This document shows positions 7,282 through 48,982 of a stretch of 53,045 bases of DNA, piece by piece. The stretch covers positions 1 through 53,045 of the forward strand of contig MQRK01249798.1 of NCBI GenBank assembly GCA_001938485.1, given 5' to 3'. Position numbers and translations under genes: made by a program. Numbering within the stretch: position 1 is the stretch's first letter; each line of letters opens with the position of its first letter. A model generated the notes under the pieces. It saw nothing but the letters and a program-made list of their open reading frames with translations, did no database searches and was not told the origin of the DNA. The stretch is from Girardia tigrina (taxonomy: Eukaryota).

Positions 7282-8235
7282 ATGTGTAAAATCCATTTTC
7301 CATCGGAATTCAAGATAAAACTGAACATTCTCTACACTGTTCTAGCTGTCCTGTCTTTGGTCTACAATGCGTCGTGTCTCATTGTTATCTTTGCTAACAA
7401 CATCCACCTCCATTCAAAACTAGCAACTCATATTATACGAAACCAATTTATATTCGATTTCTTCGTTCTTTTGCTTTTAGTTATTATGATCAATGAAGAA
7501 TGTGTCGATTTTAATATTTTAATCTTAGATAAAATCATTTGCTACTTGTGGCGAACTCAGTTTCCATACTGGGCAATGGTCTGTATGTCCATCGTTAATC
7601 TTGTTGATAATTGTATTGACCGGGTTATCGCCGTCCGGTGGGCGACATCCTATAAGGCAACCATGAACATAAGATTTAAATTATATTATATATTTTTATT
7701 TTTGCTTCCACTAGTGGCCTCATTTCCTATGATATTTTTTCAAAGATATGGTAATAATGATTGTGTAAATCGAAGGATAAACGGCACCAATGAGTACATT
7801 ATGTTTCGTAAATACTATACTTTTTTTTGGTTCATTGCTACATTTATCATTCCGGTAATTATTTCTTTGATAACCTTTACTATAATGCACGAAGTAATGC
7901 ACCGGACAGCCAGCCATGGTGGCGGCACCATGATGAGGAAATCTGAAATTCGTTATTCTGCTGTTACTTTCTTATCAATAGTTATATTTATATTTTCATA
8001 TGGTTTACAAAGTTTGTTCTTTATGATGAAAATATTTGATGGTTTTAAATTTGAAGATGGAAATCAAGTAGAAGAATTACTTATTGTTTTAGGGTCCATC
8101 TCGAGTATGTTAAATCCTTTGATTTTTAATTTTCTCTTAAAATATTTACGAAAAAAATGGATGATCTTTTGGGGCAGCTGCTTTCAAAAACAATGGCGGA
8201 ACGTCGTCAAACCAATTATCAGCACAAATGCATAA
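7282..8235 (+). CDS. Intronless rhodopsin-like 7TM GPCR (flatworm orphan/PROF1-like), 317 aa
   Basis: Seven hydrophobic segments, TM2 NQFIFD, TM3 C...CIDRV (DRY variant), ECL2 Cys, TM5 FIIP and TM7 NPLIF. Confidence 0.9.
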   Translation: MCKIHFPSEFKIKLNILYTVLAVLSLVYNASCLIVIFANNIHLHSKLATHIIRNQFIFDFFVLLLLVIMINEECVDFNILILDKIICYLWRTQFPYWAMVCMSIVNLVDNCIDRVIAVRWATSYKATMNIRFKLYYIFLFLLPLVASFPMIFFQRYGNNDCVNRRINGTNEYIMFRKYYTFFWFIATFIIPVIISLITFTIMHEVMHRTASHGGGTMMRKSEIRYSAVTFLSIVIFIFSYGLQSLFFMMKIFDGFKFEDGNQVEELLIVLGSISSMLNPLIFNFLLKYLRKKWMIFWGSCFQKQWRNVVKPIISTNA

Positions 8236-8471
8236 GATACAGGACTTTTAAATGAGTTTCAAGATTACTTAATTTCTGTATTAATATAAAAAATAAAGTA
8301 TATGTTTACAATTGTTTTACTTGATGTATTAATCAATCCTATTAAATTTACGTTCACAAGACTCAATAAAATATACATGTAAATATGACAAAATATCATA
8401 GTGAAACTCTTTGAATTATGTCAAACGTTATTTTCAATTATAATTAATAGCTATTTTGAAAATATCAGAAC

Positions 8472-8638
8472 TGTGAAGAACCGAAAGTGTCTTCACTTTT
8501 TAAAATAAAAATCCAAGAATAATACTCCAAAATTTATTTCGAACGCTTAACAATTTAACATTTTTATTTCGTCAATTTATTAATCAATTTAATTATATTA
8601 TAGGAATTAAATCCTATATCCAAGAGTAGGTCACTACA
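8472..8638 (-). repeat. 3' LTR of the boule-carrying element
   Basis: Direct repeat of 10336-10502, preceded on the minus strand by a PPT. Confidence 0.95.
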
Positions 8639-8652
8639 CAAGCCCCCTTTTG
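8639..8652 (-). other. Polypurine tract
   Basis: Minus strand AAAAGGGGG-CTTG immediately before the TGTAGT start of the 3' LTR. Confidence 0.8.
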
Positions 8653-8673
8653 TAAGTGGAGCGTTACGTTGTT

Positions 8674-10149
8674 TCAAACACTTTGAAAATTATGTTCGAA
8701 TCTTGATTTGATTTTGTTACGGAATTCGTTATTTAAATGTGTAAAATCAATTTCTTCAAATGATTTTTTTGCATAAAATCTGATTCGTTTCTGGTTTACA
8801 ATTGTTTCGATGCCATTTATGATCAAAAGGAAAGAGTTTTTTTGATTTTTCACAATTTTGTATGGTCCGTCGAATCCACCAAATAGGTTATCTCTGACTA
8901 AAGCTCCAAAGTCAGAGAAAGTATTTGTAAATGTTTCATTGATTTCCTCAGTTAACAATTTGTTGATATTCTTAATTTGACCTACGGAGGTGATGTTGTT
9001 AACTTGATTTTGTTTTTTTATAAATGGATGATATTCTTTTTGATAATCGTGTTTTATGCAACTGCTGATGTCTGTGGTGAAAGCCGTCTCTTGATTTGAA
9101 ATATGAAGATTTGTTTGACTAAGAACATGATTTTCTTTAATTTCCTCGTGTTGCGTGTAATTGTCCTTGTGGGTTCTGGATGATAAGTTTTCAGTCGAAG
9201 TGGTCTGTACTGTCTTGTTCTGAAATGTTTTGTTAAAATTTTTAACGTCATTTTGAGGAATATGTAGAATTTCGTGTCCTGGAGTCATTGGACTCAACAA
9301 ATGTGTTGTGGTAGGTGTTACATTAGGAGGAGAAAGATTCTGGGATTTTGTAGTAGCCACCCCCTTTAATGTTTGAACAGTCGTATTAGAACTATTATTA
9401 CTAGAAGATTGTAAAGGAGATTGAGGAGCTGCTGTTAATCCAGCTAATGTAACACATGGTGTTGCAGTGGTCGAATCAGTAGACTTCGGTCTAGTTTGTA
9501 GAGATGCCACTTGTTGTGCATAATTAGGGTTAGGAATTACGGTGGCAGGAATTTGATGAACGTACTGGGGTTGCGGTAAATACATCGTTGTGGTCGATTG
9601 AGGTAACATCATAGTTGCATATTGTGGAGACAACACTGTTAAAGCAGAATAATGTTGCACAGGAACCTGACATAAAGTTGATCCATTTTGCAAAGCATAT
9701 GGAACTGGTCTATTATATGAAATTGTTCCAGAAATTTCTTGTCGAGGATATAAATGTTTCTTTCTTACAGCTTGTTTAATGTTTAATTTTCTCTCTTTAA
9801 AGATCAATGTTTCAGATTCATTCTTGGTGAGTTTTTCAGCCATTTCTTCATTTTCAAAAGTCACAAATCCATAGCTTCTTTTCGATAATCCCGTACAATC
9901 ATTTATTATATTTGCGTATTTAATTGGACCATAATTCGAAAAGAAAATTTTTAATTCGTCCTCAGTTGTATTTGATGTGAGTCCACCCACAAAAATTCTG
10001 TTTGGTTTAAGTGTACCAATTTTCGGTATTGATACGTGAGAAAAAGAATTGAGCTGATTTATTTGATTGATCTTGTTATGCTTGACTTTATTTATAGTTT
10101 TAGAAATTCCCAATGCCAATAAAGAGTATTCAACATTTTTTTTGTACAT
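8674..10149 (-). CDS. boule: Chimeric Boule/DAZ-family RRM protein with Gypsy integrase C-terminal tail, 491 aa, intronless
   Basis: PKIGTLKPNRIFVGG...YGFVTFE...KLNIKQAVRK matches the Boule RRM signature (PRYGTVIPNRIFVGG...GYGFVTF...KLNIGPAIRK). Post-RRM PYALQNG resembles PYTYHNG. A P/Q/T/Y-rich region follows, then a C-terminal LVRD...FDGPYKIV...VNQKRIRFY integrase GPY motif. Confidence 0.88.
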   Translation of the reverse strand: MYKKNVEYSLLALGISKTINKVKHNKINQINQLNSFSHVSIPKIGTLKPNRIFVGGLTSNTTEDELKIFFSNYGPIKYANIINDCTGLSKRSYGFVTFENEEMAEKLTKNESETLIFKERKLNIKQAVRKKHLYPRQEISGTISYNRPVPYALQNGSTLCQVPVQHYSALTVLSPQYATMMLPQSTTTMYLPQPQYVHQIPATVIPNPNYAQQVASLQTRPKSTDSTTATPCVTLAGLTAAPQSPLQSSSNNSSNTTVQTLKGVATTKSQNLSPPNVTPTTTHLLSPMTPGHEILHIPQNDVKNFNKTFQNKTVQTTSTENLSSRTHKDNYTQHEEIKENHVLSQTNLHISNQETAFTTDISSCIKHDYQKEYHPFIKKQNQVNNITSVGQIKNINKLLTEEINETFTNTFSDFGALVRDNLFGGFDGPYKIVKNQKNSFLLIINGIETIVNQKRIRFYAKKSFEEIDFTHLNNEFRNKIKSRFEHNFQSV

Positions 10150-10321
10150 CGAAAAGCAGTCTTTCCATAGCGTTTAGTAGAAAATTGTATTTTACGTTTA
10201 ACTGCGACAAATTATCTGTTGATCTTGATATGTGGATAATAATTCCTGGATTAACTGATTGAAATTTCTTTTTGAAGAACTTTCCTTTTTTAATGGAGGC
10301 ATCTTCTTCTTTCTTTTTTTT

Positions 10322-10333
10322 CTTCTGACATCA
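10322..10333 (-). other. Primer binding site (tRNA-Leu-like)
   Basis: TGATGTCAGAAG starts 2 nt after the 5' LTR; 11/12 match to the Leu-type PBS TGGTGTCAGAAG. Confidence 0.75.
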
Positions 10334-10335
10334 AT

Positions 10336-10502
10336 TGTGAAGAACCGAAAGTGTCTTCACTTTTTAAAATAAAAATCCAAGAATAATACTCCAAAATTTA
10401 TTTCGAACGCCTAACAATTTAACATTTTTATTTTGTCAATTTATTAATCAATTTAATTATATTATAGGAATTAAATCCTATATCCAAGAGTAGGTCACTA
10501 CA
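10336..10502 (-). repeat. 5' LTR of the boule-carrying element
   Basis: Direct repeat of 8472-8638, followed on the minus strand by the PBS. Confidence 0.95.
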
Positions 10503-11074
10503 AGAACCATTTATTCTAAGGCTGGGTAAAATTATCTACATTAAACTCTGTATTAATATGAGGTGCCTCACATATAATTTATTTTCTTTATTTACAACAC
10601 ATGACAATGAGTATTTGTGAGGATTATTGAAGACTTAAATTTTCGAATTAACGCTAACAAAATATTTTAACTTAATATTAAAGAATAAAAGTAAAAAATA
10701 GAAATTTATTGTAAAAAAGTAAAGACGATAAAATGTGGGATAAAGTTACAATATAAATAATATTTAAAAAGAAATGTTTTAGATAAAATTTAAAGTAATA
10801 AAATTAATAAATTAAATAGTTTTGAAAATGAATTAAATATAAGATCTAAAAATAGTTAAACAGAATTTAGAAATATTGAAGAAAAAAAATATATGAAGAA
10901 AAATAAAATAAAAATAAAAAATTAATGAAACAATTATAATTTATCGAAGTTTAATAAAATGTTCATTCAAAAGAAAATACAATATTTCAAAAAATAAAAA
11001 ATTAATAAATAAAATATTTGAAAATAGTTTATTTTTCCATTATTTTTATTATTAGCTTACTTTATATACTTTAT

Positions 11075-11869: not shown

Positions 11870-12032
11870 TGTGATATTAAAATGAATAATTAAAAAGCAT
11901 GATTAATTATAATTGAATATTTGTTTTAATAATTGATGTAATGTGGTATTTGTGAAATATATAAATTAATCGTCAATTACATTTATTGAATTTTGGTTAT
12001 CATATTATTAATATTATTGTGATAATATAACA
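11870..12032 (+). repeat. Gypsy 5' LTR followed by a tRNA-Ser-like PBS
   Basis: TGTGATATT...AATATAACA termini, immediately followed by TGGCGTCACGAGCAGG (12033-12048). Confidence 0.75.
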
Positions 12033-13103
12033 TGGCGTCACGAGCAGGTAAGAATAATTTTTTGGACGAATTTTTCTTTAGGGAAAAAGAAACAAAACTT
12101 TTCGTTTACAAAAAACATTCTGCAAGTTCAACCGCAATCAAGGAGCACGTAAGAAACGTTCAAGAGTTTGTTAAGTTATTTACATTGGGTGAAAAGAGTG
12201 AATTCGGAATTGAGTTATGTTGGAAAAAGGAAAATGATGAAATACCCGATCAAAATTTTCAGGTATGTAATTTAGAAGCAAGATTCGGCCGGAAAGTAAC
12301 AGACGAGGAACGATTTCAGAAAGCCAAAAATACGATGCATATCGCTGTTAAACCAAAGATAATCAATGTCGTAGAGAGGCATAAAAGAGTTTTCATGGCG
12401 GATAAATGGGATGCACGACACTGATAAAACACAGAATAGATACAAAAGGACCGCCAATTAATTTGAGACCACATAGACAGCCAACCAATCTAGAAGAGAA
12501 AATCAATGAAACTATAAAAAACCTGAGGGAAAACAACATTATAAGGAAGTGTAACTCTCCATGGAATACTCCGATGATATGCGTGTGGAAAAAGAAAAAA
12601 ATGATATCAGACTTTGCTTAGATTTTAGACAACTGAATCTAGTTACAGAGAGACAGGCATTTCCAATGCCAAATATGATAGAAATGATAGACGAGTTGTA
12701 TGGATCTAGTTATTTTACTTCGATTGATTTGGGTAATGCATATTACCAGGTAGACCTAGAAGAAGAATCAAAGCTGAAAACGGAGTTTTCGACGAAAGCG
12801 GGGCAATTTTGTTTTAATAAAATGCCGTTTGGTATTGCAGCGGCACGGTGGACGTTTCAAGAACTTATGACAAGGAAATTGGGGGATATAGAACAGACAG
12901 TAGTTTATTTGGACGATATCTTAATCTTCTCAAAATCATTAGAAAAGCATTACGAGATTTTAGACAGAGTATTGNATAGAATTGAAAAGGCAGGTCTAAG
13001 AATTAATCCAGAGAAATGTCATATTTTAAAAACAGAAGTCAAATTCCTGGGGCATGTAATCAACGAAAAAGGGATTCAAACAGATCCGTCCAAATTGTTT
13101 TAA
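12032..13103 (+). mobile_element. Internally deleted Gypsy element: gag start plus frameshifted RT
   Basis: HRIDTKGPPI, SPWNTP, RLCLDFRQLN, IDLGNAYYQV, MPFG, YLDDILIFS and FLGHVI. Confidence 0.92.
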
Positions 13104-32439: not shown

Positions 32440-34161
32440 TGTTGTCCTAACAAATTTTATCCATAACCGGTTTATGAATTGATAGAGGAACTGAATGTTT
32501 TCTGTAGTCCTCAAATTCGGTTGTCATTATTAAACAGTTGTCATTTAAACAGTCTTCATCCTGATCATCTACATCTTCCCCGGAAATAGACTCGTAGGGA
32601 AATTGTTCAATCTGGTTTGAAACAGCCAAGTCTCGCAAAACTTTCTACCATACACATCATGGTTTGCTATATGCCAATCGTCAGGGTTCGAACTAAATCC
32701 TGATGATATTATTGAGTTTTGTATGGTTTCGGTATTCAATTCATTCAAAGATTCTCCGACCCATGAATTAACCAATTCCTTCGATGGTGGTTTTGGATTA
32801 CCCTTTTTGGTATAAACAACAGAATCAGAGTTCTTCCATTCATTAATGCAAAAATATATCAAATTTTTCAAGGAACGAAAAATTCCTATATCTTTTGCTT
32901 GTAGATAAGGTGTCAATCCCCCTGGGATCACGATCATTTCAACATTTCTCTTAACACAATGTTCTTTTACTTGTAGGCATAAATGAACTCGACACGAATC
33001 CCAAATGATACAATTACCGTTGCTTAAATCAATCAAAGGAAACATGGTTGATCCACTTTATAATTAACTCTTGGTTAACCCAGGATTTTGATTGAGTAGT
33101 ATACAAAATACGATTTTGTTTACAAATAGGACTTCCATCCTTTCCTTTATGGATCACCAAAGGTATTGTCTTCCTACCATCTGACCAAATAGAAATCAGT
33201 GCTGTTACTCTCATTGAACTAAAACCAGTTGATTTCATTACTACACGGCGTGCTCCGAGTAAATCCACAATATTTGTCTGGCATGCTCAAAAAATACTGC
33301 AGTTTCATCTATCATTAAAGTCTTTTTAATATTTAAATAAGTAAGACGATTTTTTAAATATTTTATATAATTAACAGCACGTAAAATTATGTCAGAGTCT
33401 GACAATGTTGTTAAATTGGTAGTTCACCTAAGTGTAAATCCATTTCTCTTCATAAACTCTTTTATCCAATTTCCAGTAGCCTTTAATTTAATATTAAACT
33501 CTTTACTCAATGCCACTGCCCTTTCAGAAATACAGGAGTGGCCATAAGTCGCTTTACCCAGTTTTAATAATAATAAACACAAAATTCTAAATGAAACAAC
33601 TTTTATTTAATCATTTAAAACTGGGTTAAGCGACTTATGACCACCCCTGTATACTTCCGACTAAATTTCCTTTTCGTATTCTAAGATCTATTATCTCATC
33701 ACAAATAATTTGTTCTATAGTTCCCAAACTGGTTTTCTTTCCTGCTCACAACGCCCTTTTCATTGATGGTTTTTGATTAGCAAGTTTGTCTCTGTTTCTA
33801 AACCCCTGTTGAAACATTGAATGATCAGATATTTCCCCGTTTTTAACTTCGAAATGCTGTTTTCCAGCATAACACGTTTTACCTTGCAACATAAACTCGA
33901 TTACTTCTTTTTTGAAAGTGATTGTAAACGATCATTTGGCCATAAGAATTTTTAAAATGGAATATTTATTAACATTAAAACAATTTAATTGAATGATTTT
34001 AAAAATTAATGATTTTTTTAAGTGATTTATAAAAACTTAAATAGTGATACTAATAGAGTCGTGATACTATTTAAATATTATCATTACAAATTTTTTGAAT
34101 TGGTGATATTATTTGGGTCGTGATACTATATGGGTTGGTGATACCAATTGGCGATATCCGT
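32440..34161 (-). mobile_element. pogo/Tc2-like (CENP-B HTH + DDE_1) transposon, decayed
   Basis: KATGNWIKSFMKRNGF, DETAVF, SDGRKTIPLVIHKG, QSKSWV, IIWDSCRVH and IPGGLTPYLQAKD; GTGATACTA subterminal repeats and TATCCGT-TA end. Confidence 0.9.
33533..33649. mobile_element. Tc1/mariner-type MITE (117 bp) nested in the pogo element
   Basis: TA|CAGGAGTGGCCATAAGTCGCTTTACCCAGTTTTAA ... TTAAAACTGGGTTAAGCGACTTATGACCACCCCTG|TA. Confidence 0.9.
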
Positions 34162-34386: not shown

Positions 34387-35835
34387 TCAAAATTGGTAAT
34401 TTTTAACTTCATAAACTGAAGAATCATTTAAATCCTCTGCATTCTCCTCCAATTCAATTAACTCGTTCAATTCGTCATATAACTTGGAGCCTTGGTCCGT
34501 GAGATGAAATCCCGTCTGTTGAATGACATCCGTGATACAGCTTTCAGTGATCAATTCTCTCGGAATATCACTCTCTGGGTGTTGCATTAGGGTTAAGATT
34601 AAAACATCCAGAATCACGAGGAAATTTGTAAAGTCTTTTGTTAACAAAATTTGAGAGAAAACATCAAGCATTTCTCGATTAAACCAAAATTTCATCTGTG
34701 ATTCGGAACAAAATTTTGTTAAAAGACTCAAAAATACTAGAGCTTCTTCTTGGATTCTCGGTGGTCCTTTAGTCAGAGAGACCATAATAAAAGATATGAT
34801 ATTTGATGATAAAAAATGCTCAAATCCATCCGAATCCTCACTGGCCATGTTTGATAAGAATAAGAGCACCTCTTTCCAAGTATTGTTATCAACTAATGTG
34901 AACCTACAATCTATTTGTTGAATAATTTTGAATCGTAAAAGGAGTTGAAAGAGGTTTTTGATATCAAAGTAAACAGTATTAAACAATTTAAATATAGGAT
35001 AAATCATTTTTGGATGGTTTTCGGACATAATCTTTGAAAGGGTCTCGAGTACATAGTCGTCAGTTAAGATGTCTTTATATGTCGAAGTATTCTCTAATAA
35101 ATAAATCATTCCTAAAATTATATTTCCCTTCGATTTATAACAGCTTTTAACTAAAATAAGTTTTGATGTTTCCAATAACCTTGGAATGAAGGGTTCCAGT
35201 CTTTCAGAATTGAAATTAAATACATCTTTTATGATTTCGGATAAACATAATTCAAAAGAAGGGAAATAGAAACTTGTATGAAGGTTGTGTAAAAGATCGA
35301 CTATATTCATTTCCGTGAAAAAGAAACATACATCCTCCGAATGAGACGTTAATTTAGATACGAGTTTCAAAGTTGAAAGAAGAATTCCAAAATCATAGGT
35401 TTGAAATAGTAATTGTATAATCTCTTTAAAGGAATCATTGAAAAGTTTGGATATGGATCCCCATGAATTGGTGAAAATATTTGACAAATTATCTAAATAA
35501 TAAATTATATTTAAGGGATCAGTGTTGGATTTTACTTTAAACCAAAAAATATCTATTATTCCATTTTCGACGAAAAAATCCACGCTGTTCTCATAAGACT
35601 GGGAAATAAGTTGTAGAGTATTAAATGCCACTTCGTTTTGATCTTTGTTATCAACTTCCAGTAAAAATCTTATATAATTTATTTCTTGTTCCGAAGGGAG
35701 CGTTTCCGAAGAGTTAATATTTCGGTGTTTTTCTCTCAAAACTTCCTTGGATCTTAATCGGTCTTGGACAATTTGATCCTTGAATTTACGTTTAGATAAT
35801 TCAACGTTTTTATTTTGATTTTTCCAATTTCTCAT
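34387..35835 (-). CDS. Divergent intronless importin-alpha-like ARM-repeat protein, 482 aa
   Basis: IBB-like N-terminus (WKNQNKNVELSKRK...REKHRNI), ARM-like helices (KEVLLFLSNMAS, IQEEALVFLSLLT) and an acidic tail ending in YQF. Confidence 0.7.
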   Translation of the reverse strand: MRNWKNQNKNVELSKRKFKDQIVQDRLRSKEVLREKHRNINSSETLPSEQEINYIRFLLEVDNKDQNEVAFNTLQLISQSYENSVDFFVENGIIDIFWFKVKSNTDPLNIIYYLDNLSNIFTNSWGSISKLFNDSFKEIIQLLFQTYDFGILLSTLKLVSKLTSHSEDVCFFFTEMNIVDLLHNLHTSFYFPSFELCLSEIIKDVFNFNSERLEPFIPRLLETSKLILVKSCYKSKGNIILGMIYLLENTSTYKDILTDDYVLETLSKIMSENHPKMIYPIFKLFNTVYFDIKNLFQLLLRFKIIQQIDCRFTLVDNNTWKEVLLFLSNMASEDSDGFEHFLSSNIISFIMVSLTKGPPRIQEEALVFLSLLTKFCSESQMKFWFNREMLDVFSQILLTKDFTNFLVILDVLILTLMQHPESDIPRELITESCITDVIQQTGFHLTDQGSKLYDELNELIELEENAEDLNDSSVYEVKNYQF

Positions 35836-41640: not shown

Positions 41641-42934
41641 TTAGTTTGAGGAATAAGTTCCCGCCGTTTTTTGAATTTTTAATCAATTTAATATTTAAAT
41701 CAAATTTTTTGAAGTTATGTTATATGTTATTTGAAAGCTATTGTTTTGCTCTAAAAAATGGTATTTTGTTTTTTTATTCAGATTAATTTTTGTCGATTTT
41801 TAGACCATTGAAATGGAGTGTCAAGTCGACAAAAATGCGCATTTCCGACACCATCTATTGTTTGCGTATAATCGAGGCGCCAAAGCCGCAGACGCTACCC
41901 GAGAGCTTTGTGCTGTATACGGAGAAGGTGCTATAGCTGATAGAACCGCTTGTGATTGGTTCGCAAAATTTAAAATTGGCAATTTTGACCTCAAGGATGC
42001 ACTTCGTTCAGGACGACCAAATTAATTCGATGAAGAGCGTTTGAAAAAACTTTTGCATGAAGACGCGCGTCAAACCACTCGAGAATTGGCGGAACAAATG
42101 GATTGTGATCAAAAAACTGCCGTGAACCTCCTGAAATAAATTGAAAAAGTTCAAAAAATGGGAACTTGGGTCCCACTTCTTTTGACCGTAAACAACAAAA
42201 ACCAGCGATCCACAATTTCGGCGAGTTTGCTTGCCCGTCATCGCTCTACTCACGGTCATAAGCAACAATTTCTTTATCGAATTGTAACGGGTGATGAAAA
42301 ATGGTGCCTGTACTTCAACATAAAACAGCGCAAAGAATGGCGTAGCCGAGAAGAACAATCGACACCGCGAGCAAAACAGGATCTTCATCCACGAAAGACA
42401 ATGCTATGGGTTTGGTGGGGTTGGGAAGGGATTATTCATTATGAATTGCTTCCTCGAAACCAAACAGTGAACGCAGAACTTTATGTTCAACAGCTGCATA
42501 GACTCAACGCCGCTATAAGACAAAAACATCCGGATCGACAACATGGCGTTATTTTGCAATACGACAATGCACGTCCTCATATTGCCAGAATGACAAAAGA
42601 AGCCATACAAACGCTTGGTTGGGAAGTGGTACCGCACACTCCGTATTCACCTGACTTGGCTCCATCTGATTTTCATCTTTTCCGTTCGCTTTCTAACGCT
42701 TTGTGTGGTGTTTCGTTCAACAATGATGAAGAACTGCAAATTTGGTTGACTGAATTTTTCAAGTCAAGACCGAGCGATTTCTACCAAAGAGGCATTGAAA
42801 AACTCGTTGAACGTTGGGAAGAAGTCGTGAACAATGGCGAGATTATATTTGTGATTAATTTGTAGTAACTTTTTTTGTTAAAAAATAAAATTTCAATTTT
42901 TCAAAAAACGGCGGGAACTTATTCCTCAACCCAA
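41641..42934 (+). mobile_element. Full-length mariner (1294 bp, DD34D) with interrupted transposase
   Basis: 34-bp TIRs with 2 mismatches and TA flanks. WVP, TGDEKW, YDNARPH and YSPDLAPSD motifs. ORF split into 41813-42025 and 42158-42865. Confidence 0.97.
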
Positions 42935-44120: not shown

Positions 44121-44931
44121 CGTCATATTCATTAAAATCGTTATTAAGAAATTAAAATTTTTATTTACTGTGTTTAAATTTCGATTATTCAAACCTATTA
44201 TTTCTAAAAATATTATTGAATAATTTTTAATATATTATTCCAAAACCATGTATATTTTAAAAATATTAAACTTGCGTTCACAAGACTCAATAATAATATA
44301 TATGAGTGGTTAATTTAAATTTGCATCTCGACAAAATAATTTATTATTTTATTTAATTTAAAAGTTAAAATATTTCTATGTTTATATGCTTATTAAATAT
44401 TTTAAAATTAAAAATGATATAATAAAGCAACTATTAAATACGTATTTAAAAATAAAATATGTTTTTAATATGTTTACTAAATATTTTAAAAATTAAAAAT
44501 GATATAATAAAAGAACATCATTAAAAATTAAATACTTATTTAAAAATAAAAAATATATTTTATTAATGTATCTATTAAATATCTTAAAATTAAAAATTAT
44601 AAGAAAACAATTAAATATTTATTTATAAATAAAAATATTTTTACAGTCATAACAATTTCTATATTTTAATAGAAGTTATGAAACAATTTTAAATAAATTT
44701 TAAAATAAATTTTTAGTTTTATTGTGAAAATTAATTAATTAATTTAATAAAATTTGCTAAATTTTAAAAATCGAATCGAAAAGAATTTTATAGATTGATT
44801 ATGGTGAGATAATTGAATTAACAGGAAAATTTGATTAAATAAATATTTGAATTGTTGTTATATTAATAAATTGTGGTGTTAAATTATGAGTTCTGAATTT
44901 GATAATAATAATAGTGGCATAAACGCTACTT

Positions 44932-44934
<3 letters not shown>

Positions 44935-44976
<42 letters not shown>

Positions 44977-45950
44977 NNNNNNNNNNNNNNNNNNNNNNNN
45001 NNNNNNNNNNNNNNNNNNNNNNNNNNNNNNNNNNNNNNNNNNNNNNNNNNNNNNNNNNNNNNNNNNNNNNNNNNNNNNNNNNNNNNNNNNNNNNNNNNNN
45101 NNNNNNNNNNNNNNNNNNNNNNNNNNNNNNNNNNNNNNNNNNNNNNNNNNNNNNNNNNNNNNNNNNNNNNNNNNNNNNNNNNNNNNNNNNNNNNNNNNNN
45201 NNNNNNNNNNNNNNNNNNNNNNNNNNNNNNNNNNNNNNNNNNNNNNNNNNNNNNNNNNNNNNNNNNNNNNNNNNNNNNNNNNNNNNNNNNNNNNNNNNNN
45301 NNNNNNNNNNNNNNNNNNNNNNNNNNNNNNNNNNNNNNNNNNNNNNNNNNNNNNNNNNNNNNNNNNNNNNNNNNNNNNNNNNNNNNNNNNNNNNNNNNNN
45401 NNNNNNNNNNNNNNNNNNNNNNNNNNNNNNNNNNNNNNNNNNNNNNNNNNNNNNNNNNNNNNNNNNNNNNNNNNNNNNNNNNNNNNNNNNNNNNNNNNNN
45501 NNNNNNNNNNNNNNNNNNNNNNNNNNNNNNNNNNNNNNNNNNNNNNNNNNNNNNNNNNNNNNNNNNNNNNNNNNNNNNNNNNNNNNNNNNNNNNNNNNNN
45601 NNNNNNNNNNNNNNNNNNNNNNNNNNNNNNNNNNNNNNNNNNNNNNNNNNNNNNNNNNNNNNNNNNNNNNNNNNNNNNNNNNNNNNNNNNNNNNNNNNNN
45701 NNNNNNNNNNNNNNNNNNNNNNNNNNNNNNNNNNNNNNNNNNNNNNNNNNNNNNNNNNNNNNNNNNNNNNNNNNNNNNNNNNNNNNNNNNNNNNNNNNNN
45801 NNNNNNNNNNNNNNNNNNNNNNNNNNNNNNNNNNNNNNNNNNNNNNNNNNNNNNNNNNNNNNNNNNNNNNNNNNNNNNNNNNNNNNNNNNNNNNNNNNNN
45901 NNNNNNNNNNNNNNNNNNNNNNNNNNNNNNNNNNNNNNNNNNNNNNNNNN
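44935..45950. other. (AT)n microsatellite followed by a 974-N assembly gap
   Basis: Seen directly. Similar AT-flanked 50-N gaps occur at 23911-23960 and 37739-37788. Confidence 0.98.
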
Positions 45951-46267
45951 AAGTGAAACAGTAACACCCTTTTCGATTTGAATACAAGTTTGTAATGATT
46001 TAAGAGTTGTTGAAACATCCAATTCAATTTTGTTTTTATAAAAGTTTCAATGTCGGTTGTTATTTTTTTTGCTTTTGGAATACGAGCTTTCACAGATTCT
46101 ATTCTTCCAAATTTTAAATACATCCTAACTACGCTTCTAACAGTTTCATACTTAACATCGTATTTCGTAGAAATTTCTTTGAATGACAATCCTTCTTCGT
46201 ATTTTTGTACTATTTTTCTCCTGGTTTCATCACTCATCTGTTTTTGTTGCTTCCCACTATTTTGCAT
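45951..46267 (-). mobile_element. IS630/Tc1-like transposase N-terminal HTH
   Basis: SDETRRKIVQKYEEGLSFKEISTKYDVKYETVRSVVRMY; truncated by the gap. Confidence 0.75.
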
Positions 46268-48025: not shown

Positions 48026-48982
48026 TTATGTATTCGAACTAGATATAGATCTAACGACATTTATCCAACGTTTTTTTCTCAAAAAAAAGAGCCATATATA
48101 AACCCACTGGGTTCTCAGACCCTTCAAAATGATAGTATACATTCCCGCATTTATCATACTGGAGATTGATCCAAGCATCATTAGCAATTGCTTGAAGGGA
48201 CTGTCCCTTGGGACTGCCATGACATTGAACCAGCTTAATACATACAGCATACTTTGAAAACCGTATGTAAATACAAATACAAAAATCGTCGCAAACGTCA
48301 CTAAAATAAATCGTATTTCCGATTTTCGTAGAGCCACACCTCCATCAGATTTGGATGTTTGATGCATGAATTTATAAATTATGACAAAACTAATTAAAAG
48401 TATAATCAAAGGAATGATCACTGTTGTAATGAACCAAAATGTTGTATGAAACTTATGAAAGGTTTCGAAAATGACTAAAGAATTATTCTTTCTATAAATA
48501 CAAGTATTGTTGACGAATTTCGTATCAAAAACAATTGGAAGGGAAATAAATAATGGAATCAAAATTAGGAAAATATAATATAACTTGAATCGCTTGATCA
48601 TTGATACTTTATAAGCTGTCGCCCAATACGTCGCCACGACTCTGTCAATGCAGTTGTCCACCAGATTTAGTATAGACGCGAAGATCATCGTCCAGTACGG
48701 GAATTGGGTTCTCCAAAAGTGGCAAATAATCTCATCGACTATTTGATTATTGAAGCTTTCGCAACTGTCACAAAGTATAATCATTAAAAAAAATAAAACA
48801 AAAAAGTCAATGATAAATTGGTTTCGTATAATGTGAGTTGAGAGTTTCGAGTGTAAGCGAACTTTCTTGACGAAAATGACGACGATACACGACACATTAT
48901 AGGCCAAAGACACAAACGTTAACACCGTATAAAAAATGTTCAATTTATTCGCCCATTCCACTTCGAAAACGACTTTGCACAT
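48026..48982 (-). CDS. Intronless rhodopsin-like 7TM GPCR, 318 aa, paralog of 7282-8235
   Basis: Shares LHSKLxTHIIRNQFI, WRTQFPYW, NLVDNCIDRV, RKSEIR and LGSISSM with the first GPCR. Confidence 0.9.
   Translation of the reverse strand: MCKVVFEVEWANKLNIFYTVLTFVSLAYNVSCIVVIFVKKVRLHSKLSTHIIRNQFIIDFFVLFFLMIILCDSCESFNNQIVDEIICHFWRTQFPYWTMIFASILNLVDNCIDRVVATYWATAYKVSMIKRFKLYYIFLILIPLFISLPIVFDTKFVNNTCIYRKNNSLVIFETFHKFHTTFWFITTVIIPLIILLISFVIIYKFMHQTSKSDGGVALRKSEIRFILVTFATIFVFVFTYGFQSMLYVLSWFNVMAVPRDSPFKQLLMMLGSISSMINAGMYTIILKGLRTQWVYIWLFFLRKKRWINVVRSISSSNT

What the first reader, a model, noticed from the sequence alone, without database searches (positions are those of the whole stretch)
8467..10507. 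Young miniature LTR retroelement whose cargo is an intact, intronless boule (germline RNA-binding regulator) ORF
Seen: 167-bp LTRs with only 2 mismatches, a perfect AGAAC TSD, a Leu-type PBS and a PPT enclose a 491-codon stop-free ORF with a Boule-type RRM, co-oriented with the element. There is no RT, RNase H or integrase core. Established: Boule/DAZ proteins control meiosis and gametogenesis, and cellular boule genes normally contain introns; LTR elements can capture mRNAs by template switching. Inference: a spliced boule mRNA was captured and the chimera then transposed as a unit, mobilised in trans. It may be a family that spreads a germline translational regulator. That could favour the element's own germline propagation or RNA packaging, or perturb host sexual development.
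Basis: partly seen in the sequence, partly recalled or inferred. Interest (0 to 1): 0.93.

Follow-up and report, generated by a model that had tools for sequence, protein, structure and literature searches.

The report
Jumping element carrying a boule gene
A small, recently inserted retrovirus-like jumping element in a planarian-type genome carries a spliced copy of the fertility gene boule, fused in frame to leftovers of the element's own proteins. Related copies in other public datasets show that this hybrid has been copied repeatedly with its RNA-binding domain kept.

Summary
Two 167-nt LTRs (2 mismatches, TG..CA ends) lie at 8472-8638 and 10336-10502, flanked by a 5-bp AGAAC duplication. 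They enclose a PBS, a polypurine tract and a 491-codon ORF on the minus strand. The ORF is a three-part fusion, not plain boule. Residues 1-38 come from the element's Gag. Residues 39 to about 305 are a Boule1-type RRM protein, 79-82% identical to Schmidtea mediterranea Boule1 and uninterrupted at five conserved intron positions. A spacer follows, then an integrase C-terminal-domain-like SH3 tail. Public metagenome contigs hold at least four more boule-bearing copies in two subfamilies. One has the identical Gag|boule junction and a 90-91% identical LTR. RRM-less relatives with the same Gag start and tail also exist. Between subfamilies the RRM shows dN/dS 0.13. This is LTR-mediated retroposition followed by secondary spread as a non-autonomous element. 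That is a known kind, but the cargo, the in-frame architecture and the persistence are unusual. The PBS tRNA type, expression, copy number in the source genome and the function of the fusion remain untested.

The parts
8467..8471 (.). Target-site duplication AGAAC (downstream side of the element as it is oriented).
   Evidence: identical 5-mer directly outside both LTRs.
8472..8638 (-). 3' LTR, 167 nt, TG..CA.
   Evidence: 165/167 identical to the other LTR; 90% identical to the LTR of L007.
8639..8654 (-). Polypurine tract region (A4G5 run on the minus strand, 4 nt from the LTR).
   Evidence: conserved in L001, L003, L004 and L007, together with the LTR start.
8674..10149 (-). 491-codon fusion ORF (stop codon included).
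   Evidence: P about 1e-16 by chance.
8677..8919 (-). Integrase C-terminal-domain-like SH3 tail (aa 411-491).
   Evidence: homologous to the extreme C-terminus of Pol fragment P0035 (RNase H, integrase zinc domain, rve core); the model (pLDDT 78) matches retroviral integrase C-terminal domains in PDB (E 7e-4, TM 0.67-0.82 on the target).
8920..9234 (-). Asn/Thr/Gln-rich spacer (aa 306-410) of element origin. It is absent from the L007 subfamily.
   Evidence: 31% identical to P0019 aa 271-386 (RRM-less relative); dN/dS 0.18 against L004 (p 0.004).
9235..10035 (-). Boule1-derived segment (aa 39-305): RRM, a segment conserved with other Boule proteins, and a low-complexity middle part.
   Evidence: 79-82% to S. 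mediterranea Boule1 in the RRM; 48% over 217 aa to the S. rodhaini homologue; no interruption at five conserved intron positions.
9811..9996 (-). RRM proper (Pfam RRM_1, aa 52-113).
   Evidence: dN/dS 0.13 against L007 (aa 51-130).
10036..10302 (-). Gag-derived N-terminal coding part. The last 38 codons are in frame with boule; the upstream part is disrupted in this copy.
   Evidence: 94% nt identity to L001, L002 and L007, ending sharply at 10036/10035; 2 frameshifting indels relative to L007 and L001; in the RRM-less relatives this part continues into a Cys/His knuckle.
10323..10333 (-). Primer-binding site, 2 nt from the LTR.
   Evidence: L001 and L007 have a TGG-starting 11-mer here; the window copy differs at one base. 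The cognate tRNA was not identified.
10336..10502 (-). 5' LTR, 167 nt, with TATA-like and AATAAA-like motifs.
10503..10507 (.). Target-site duplication AGAAC (upstream side).

Best explanation
This is a 2,031-bp non-autonomous LTR retrotransposon of a Ty3/gypsy-like lineage in a planarian-type genome. An ancestor of it acquired most of a spliced boule1 mRNA, most likely by template switching during reverse transcription. The capture replaced the Gag zinc-knuckle region, and everything up to the last domain of Pol, with boule sequence. It kept one reading frame: Gag N-terminal helix, Boule RRM and middle part, then an integrase C-terminal-domain-like tail. Shown: the anatomy, the intron loss, the shared junction, and the existence of diverged copies with homologous LTRs. 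Inferred: the hybrid was afterwards copied many times by proteins supplied by autonomous relatives; it recombined with sister elements; and the window copy is one young insertion (LTRs 1.2% apart). Most likely role (inferred, about one chance in three): the fusion serves the element itself as a Gag-like RNA-binding protein. In that reading the RRM stands in for the lost zinc knuckle, and the helix and the SH3 tail tie the protein to the helper's particles. Acting on host germline mRNAs as Boule does is the main alternative.
For: Anatomy: LTRs, TSD, PBS and PPT.
Fusion parts: the Gag start is 94% identical to RRM-less elements L001 and L002, and homology ends at one base. Those relatives continue into a Cys/His knuckle, which in P0039 is followed by a protease-type DTG motif. 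The tail is homologous to the C-terminus of Pol fragment P0035 and folds like an integrase C-terminal domain.
Boule origin and intron loss.
Family: L007 has the identical junction, a 167-nt LTR 90-91% identical, the same PBS, and an intact 452-aa fusion ORF. L003 matches L007 at 96%. L004 and L008 match the window at 91% and 95%, PPT and LTR start included.
Constraint: RRM dN/dS 0.13, dS 0.75, p 6e-9. Three RRM residues are shared by both element copies against Boule1 and the outgroup.
Architecture: the P0042 model shows a long helix, an RRM, a disordered linker and an SH3-like domain.
Mechanism known from the literature: PMC5131818.
Against: All other copies come from short, low-coverage metagenome contigs of unknown species, so the copy number within one genome is unknown. 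L007 may thread through more than one copy.
The low dN/dS of the RRM could partly reflect constraint in the cellular gene, if elements exchanged sequence with boule1 mRNA after the capture. The LTR and Gag parts are much more alike (92-94%) than the RRM's synonymous sites, which shows mosaicism.
The segment after the RRM and the middle part evolve at dN/dS 0.6-1.1.
The window copy has a disrupted Gag start and a PBS mismatch. L004, L008 and L003 carry frameshifts or stops.
No autonomous element with this LTR was found. No expression data were available.
Confidence: 0.75

Rival explanations
1. A one-off LTR-mediated retrocopy: a boule cDNA was trapped once between LTRs and never copied again; it is a dead by-product.
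For: LTR-mediated retrocopies of this build are common in animals (PMC5131818). No second copy lies in the 53-kb window. This copy shows small defects.
Against: Four other contigs from separate datasets carry the boule-plus-tail or the full structure with homologous LTRs. The junction is nucleotide-identical in L007. Between-copy divergence is 5-30% against 1.2% between this copy's LTRs. RRM dN/dS is 0.13.
Confidence: 0.05
2. A domesticated host retrogene: a boule paralogue born by LTR-mediated retroposition, now kept for host germline function, with the LTR serving as promoter. The other copies would be its orthologues or a few paralogues in related species.
For: The RRM is strongly constrained. 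There are intact long ORFs in the window and in L007. Flatworms keep several boule paralogues with germline roles (PMC6225667).
Against: An old fixed locus should have LTRs as diverged from each other as from those of its orthologues, yet they are 98.8% against 90-91%. The mosaic pattern fits exchange between co-packaged element RNAs. Several copies are decayed. PBS and PPT are conserved among copies. RRM-less siblings share the same frame ends.
Confidence: 0.15
3. Same element history, different role. The fusion keeps Boule-like activity on host or element mRNAs in germ cells or stem cells, acting as a translational activator or a competitor. It thereby raises the element's germline expression or disturbs host gametogenesis, rather than acting as a packaging protein.
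For: The RRM is 79-89% identical to Boule1 and constrained. The segment conserved among Boule proteins after the RRM is still present.
Against: That post-RRM segment and the middle part, which in DAZ-family proteins carry partner contacts (established knowledge), evolve near neutrality between subfamilies (dN/dS 1.09 and 0.64). The true Boule1 C-terminus seen in P0001 is replaced by element sequence.
Confidence: 0.3
4. An assembly artefact that joins a boule cDNA-like contaminant to repeat sequence.
For: The window contains gaps (four N runs), though none lies near the element.
Against: The same junctions were recovered by independent JGI and ENA assemblies. A precise TSD and matched LTRs are present.
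Confidence: 0.02

Closest known systems
LTR-mediated retrocopies / 'pseudo-LTR retrotransposons' of animals (Tan et al. 2016, PMC5131818) and maize Bs1
   Same: A host mRNA segment without introns sits between parts of an LTR retrotransposon. It arises by template switching, is often in frame, is driven by the LTR, and is capable of secondary retroposition with the switch points shared among copies.
   Different: Here nearly a whole coding region of one germline regulator is carried. It is fused at both ends to element protein parts. Two subfamilies differ by a synonymous distance of about 0.75 in the cargo, and the cargo's domain is under constraint. Microsimilarity at the switch points could not be checked.
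Acutely transforming retroviruses with gag-onc fusions (established knowledge)
   Same: A replication-defective LTR element has the Gag N-terminus fused in frame to a captured, spliced cellular gene. It depends on a helper for its enzymes.
   Different: This is not an infectious virus: it has no env and is a genomic retrotransposon of a flatworm. The cargo is an RNA-binding germline factor, not a growth-signalling gene. A Pol tail is retained.
LINE-1 ORF1p (coiled coil, RRM, C-terminal domain; PMC11662928 and PMC6501352 for background)
   Same: The order of parts in the predicted protein is the same: a long helix, an RRM, and a small C-terminal domain. ORF1p is a retroelement's own RNA-binding protein.
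   Different: There is no homology. The RRM here is of recent host origin, the C-terminal domain is integrase-derived, and the element class differs. This is an analogy of working, not membership.
Ty3/gypsy elements that gained a host domain (e.g. the m6A demethylase domain in orchid elements, PMC9289625)
   Same: It is a rare fixation of an extra host-derived protein domain in LTR retrotransposons, thought to serve the element's cycle.
   Different: Those are autonomous elements with the domain added to an intact pol. Here the domain replaces most of gag-pol in a non-autonomous element.
TRIM / LARD non-autonomous LTR elements (established knowledge)
   Same: Short LTRs (167 nt), a PBS and a PPT, and no RT or integrase core. 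Mobilisation in trans is presumed.
   Different: Classical TRIMs and LARDs are non-coding inside. This one has a 1.7-kb interior almost filled by one ORF.

Membership tests
LTR retrotransposon (structural definition) | Two near-identical terminal direct repeats with TG..CA ends | tested here: met
   167 nt, 165/167 identical.
LTR retrotransposon (structural definition) | Short target-site duplication | tested here: met
   AGAAC on both sides.
LTR retrotransposon (structural definition) | PBS next to the 5' LTR and PPT next to the 3' LTR | tested here: met
both are present and conserved among relatives. The window PBS has one deviating base.
Autonomous Ty3/gypsy element | gag and pol with protease, RT, RNase H and integrase core | tested here: not met
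   only an RRM is detected. Gag start and integrase C-terminal-domain-like remnants only. Relatives L005 and P0035 carry RT, RNase H and an integrase core.
Boule/DAZ family | Single RRM of Boule type, closest to bona fide Boule proteins | tested here: met
   79-82% to S. mediterranea Boule1; other named hits are boule-like proteins of molluscs and fish and trematode homologues. RNP1 block invariant. The PDB sequence search alone is not specific. No formal tree was built.
Boule/DAZ family | DAZ motif after the RRM | tested here: inconclusive
   A segment collinear with the conserved post-RRM part of Schistosoma, mollusc and fish proteins is present at aa 136-175. It evolves at dN/dS about 1.1 between element subfamilies. 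No motif model was available.
Boule/DAZ family | Germline expression and a role in gametogenesis | not testable with these tools
   No expression data were at hand.
LTR-mediated retrocopy (Tan et al. 2016) | Intron-less host sequence between retrotransposon parts | tested here: met
   with 39, 40, 43: five conserved intron positions are spanned without interruption.
LTR-mediated retrocopy (Tan et al. 2016) | Microsimilarity at the switch points | not testable with these tools
   The nucleotide sequence of the parental boule1 mRNA was not available.
LTR-mediated retrocopy (Tan et al. 2016) | Secondary retroposition with shared switch points | tested here: met
   identical 5' junction in the window and L007; diverged copies, against a young LTR pair in the window.
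Retroviral-type integrase C-terminal domain | SH3-like beta-barrel fold at the end of Pol | tested here: met
   sequence homology to the Pol C-terminus of P0035; fold match to integrase C-terminal domains. Pfam gives no hit.

The most novel reading that the evidence does not exclude
A retrotransposon lineage has swapped its nucleocapsid zinc knuckle for the RNA-binding domain of the host's meiosis regulator Boule. It has kept that domain under purifying selection through many rounds of copying and recombination. On this reading the element carries a working germline RNA-binding protein for its own benefit (packaging or germline translation of its RNA). It would be a natural gag-oncogene-like capture in a non-viral element of a regenerating, facultatively sexual animal.
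Probability: 0.35. Interest if true: 0.85.

Novelty: new variant of a known kind. Interest (0 to 1): 0.74.

Why it matters
Capture of host genes by LTR elements is known mostly as one-off retrocopies, or from transforming retroviruses and maize Bs1. Here the captured gene is a deeply conserved germline translational regulator, built in frame into the element's own protein. The hybrid seems to have lived on as a mobile family long enough to split into subfamilies while its RNA-binding domain stayed conserved. If element-level selection is confirmed, it gives a clear natural case of a retroelement recruiting a host RNA-binding module. It also offers a testable link between transposon biology and the germline/stem-cell programme of planarians, and a ready marker (the junction) for asking where and when such elements are expressed.

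Tried and rejected
Both scans of JGI metagenome contigs returned nothing, even for L001 and L002: one used protein patterns, the other the 21-nt conserved block before the junction.

Exact look-ups of the window's own proteins found nothing.

Pfam does not recognise the tail, the spacer or the Gag start.

The PDB sequence search of the RRM ranks hnRNP-type RRMs above DAZL, so it is not diagnostic.

Testing the 'Leu' PBS failed. No tRNA genes lie in the window or in nine loci. A literature string search hit only unrelated sequences.

The RT fragment next door (12.0-13.1 kb) is not the partner. It is 39% identical to the RT of L005, has no LTRs and no match to the tail.

L005, the Pol-bearing relative, shares a PPT/LTR-start motif by eye but has no alignable LTR.

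A search with the neighbouring GPCR to name the organism gave only unnamed 37-51% hits.

The idea that the RRM-less L001 type is a boule element that lost its RRM was rejected. Its middle has no boule similarity and carries the Gag knuckle.

Iyer et al. 2016 (PMC4922153) is not held.

Full report
**Observation**

The window is AT-rich (26.8% G+C). Two 167-nt direct repeats lie at 8472-8638 and 10336-10502. They differ at 2 positions, begin TG and end CA, and are flanked by AGAAC on both sides. No other copy of the repeat or of the interior lies in the window.

The interior holds one ORF, 10149..8674 on the minus strand: 491 codons with one Pfam RRM_1 domain at aa 52-113. Stop codons make up 7.2% of all triplets in the window, so such a run has a chance of about 1e-16.

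Read on the minus strand, an A4G5 purine run sits 4 nt before the 8638..8472 repeat. A PBS-like 11-mer sits 2 nt after the 10502..10336 repeat.

**The ORF is a fusion**

- *5' side.* Window 10275..10036 (leader plus the first 38 codons) is 94% identical to two JGI metagenome contigs, L001 and L002. Their ORFs, P0019 and P0029, have no RRM. Homology stops at one base, 10036/10035. In those relatives the sequence continues into a Cys/His knuckle. In a third relative, P0039, the same knuckle is followed by a protease-type DTG motif. The shared start is therefore Gag-derived.
- *Middle.* Residues 39 to about 305 are Boule. They are 79-82% identical to S. mediterranea Boule1 over the RRM. They are 48% identical over 217 residues to the Schistosoma rodhaini homologue, well beyond the RRM. 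Boule-like proteins of molluscs and fish are the other named hits.
- *3' side.* The last 80 or so residues match the extreme C-terminus of P0035, a Pol fragment with RNase H, integrase zinc domain and rve core. A model of the tail (pLDDT 78) matches integrase C-terminal SH3-like domains in PDB.
- *Spacer.* Between boule and the tail lies a spacer of about 105 residues, related to the spacer of P0019.

**Spliced origin**

The S. rodhaini gene has at least nine coding exons. Five of its introns fall inside the part aligned with the window ORF, after window residues 60, 91, 111, 137 and 173. At exactly the first three positions, two UniParc gene models of S. mediterranea boule1 (P0037, P0001) carry 3-5 extra residues relative to the cDNA-derived Boule1. 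I read this as mis-set splice sites at conserved introns. The window ORF is continuous over all five positions. The parental planarian gene itself was not available, so intron loss rests on this comparison.

**A family, not a single copy**

Cluster look-ups and contig look-ups gave four more boule-bearing pieces.

- L007 (JGI, 1,791 nt) carries an intact 452-codon ORF, P0042. It has the full Gag start (89 residues), the nucleotide-identical Gag|boule junction, RRM, boule middle and tail. A PPT follows, then a 167-nt LTR 90-91% identical to the window's, then the PBS.
- L003 (ENA) matches L007 at 96% from the boule middle into the LTR.
- L004 and L008 (ENA) match the window at 91% and 95% from the boule middle through the tail and the PPT; L004 extends 40 nt into the LTR and L008 only about 6 nt.

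The copies thus form two subfamilies. The L007 type lacks the spacer.

The window's two LTRs differ by 1.2%, whereas copies differ by 5-30%. This insertion is therefore far younger than the splits among copies, which requires copying after the capture.

Identity between the window and L007 is uneven: LTR 92%, Gag start 94%, RRM 84%, boule middle 70-78%, tail 70%. I take this mosaic as recombination among related element RNAs; that is an inference.

L009/P0039 contains a piece 81% identical to the RT gene of L005. This links the non-autonomous forms to a Pol-bearing lineage. No element with the window's own LTR plus pol was found.

**State of the copies (counts only)**

- The window copy has 2 frameshifting indels in the Gag start relative to L007 and L001, so its open frame begins at an internal ATG. 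It also has one deviating base in the PBS.
- Relative to the window's frame, L004 has 4 frameshifting indels and L008 has 3 plus one stop. L003 has at least one stop in the boule frame.
- These contigs have 1.5-3.4x coverage, so some of these differences may be assembly errors.

**Selection**

Window against L007:
- RRM core: dN/dS 0.13 (dS 0.75, Fisher p 6e-9).
- Residues 136-175: 1.09.
- Boule middle: 0.64.
- Tail: 0.36 (p 7e-4).

Window against L004:
- Spacer: 0.18 (p 0.004).
- Boule middle: 1.2.
- Tail: 0.46 (not significant).

In the RRM, three residues are shared by both element copies against Boule1 and the trematode outgroup. The window lineage has 9 private changes and L007 has 3. Pfam scores of the two RRMs are equal (62 bits).

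Two caveats apply. Because the copies are mosaic, part of the RRM divergence could have accrued in the cellular gene if elements exchanged sequence with boule1 mRNA. The tail's constraint may date from its time inside a working pol.

**Mechanism**

What is shown: a non-autonomous LTR element whose single ORF joins a Gag helix, a host RRM protein and an integrase C-terminal-like domain, and which exists as diverged copies.

What follows from established knowledge (PMC5131818): such chimeras arise by template switches between element RNA and a co-packaged mRNA, are transcribed from the LTR, and can be copied again.

What is inferred: dependence on helper proteins, and a role for the fusion. The capture removed the Gag knuckle and put an RRM in its place. 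The P0042 model shows a long helix (aa 14-63), the RRM (pLDDT 85-93), a disordered linker and the SH3-like domain. That is the same order of parts as LINE-1 ORF1p. I therefore favour a Gag-like RNA-binding role for the element itself. A Boule-like action on germline mRNAs is the main alternative.

**Organism**

The closest Boule is that of S. mediterranea, the base composition fits a planarian, and neighbouring genes gave only unnamed hits.

**Comparison and novelty**

This belongs to LTR-mediated retroposition with secondary retroposition (Tan et al. 2016; maize Bs1), and it resembles gag-onc captures. I found no report of a boule-carrying element in the library searched.

New here are the cargo, the double in-frame fusion that replaces a nucleic-acid-binding module, and the persistence with a constrained RRM. 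I rate it a new variant of a known kind.

- N runs were left as they are.
Relatives L005 and L009 are partial contigs reached by look-up from hits of the finding's own protein, and were only compared.
- Two slips in my reasoning. I began to recall a tRNA end from memory while thinking about the PBS. While reading L003 I also saw where a stop lies. I recorded the count only.
- Tool-printed alignments show indels as they stand.

Noticed in passing
L003:84-146 compared with P0036 (UniProt Smed Boule1): The last 19 residues of the deposited 154-aa S. mediterranea Boule1 match the boule part of an element copy read one frame off the conserved frame. The switch falls at the conserved intron after window ORF residue 137. 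The deposited protein may be a short, RRM-only splice form or may carry a frame problem. The element copies keep the long, Schistosoma-like frame.
   Followed up: partly
window 34387-35835 (-): A 482-codon intron-less ORF, the second longest stop-free run in the window. It has a basic N-terminus and a helical-repeat look. It has no Pfam hit and no flanking LTRs. It may be another retrocopy or a lineage-specific gene.
   Followed up: partly
window 7282-8235 (+) and 48026-48982 (-): Two intron-less rhodopsin-type GPCR ORFs (Pfam 7tm_1). The first ends 232 nt before the element. The nearest database relative is only 51% identical and unnamed.
   Followed up: partly
window 12032-13103 (+): A reverse-transcriptase fragment (RVT_1, E 3e-31), 39% identical to the RT of L005. 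The surrounding ORFs have no domains and no LTRs were found. It is a decayed, different retroelement.
   Followed up: partly
window 42158-42865 (+), 44930-46267 (-), 32569-33045 (-): DNA-transposon remains: a mariner Transposase_1 fragment; a Tc1/mariner-type HTH ORF that runs into the 974-N gap at 44977-45950; and a DDE_1 (pogo-like) fragment.
   Followed up: no
L007:1-126 and 1653-1791: In this contig the PBS-plus-leader repeat is 99% identical between its two occurrences. The partial LTR end upstream is only about 71% like the complete LTR downstream. The contig may thread through two different copies or a tandem pair.
   Followed up: no
L003:1-75: The first 75 nt or so of this contig are G+C-rich and unrelated to the element. 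This is probably a chimeric join in a low-coverage metagenome assembly.
   Followed up: no
P0035 (L005:1388-3349): The Pol fragment carries two successive GP[YF]-type SH3-like motifs after the integrase core. All non-autonomous relatives retain the second one.
   Followed up: no
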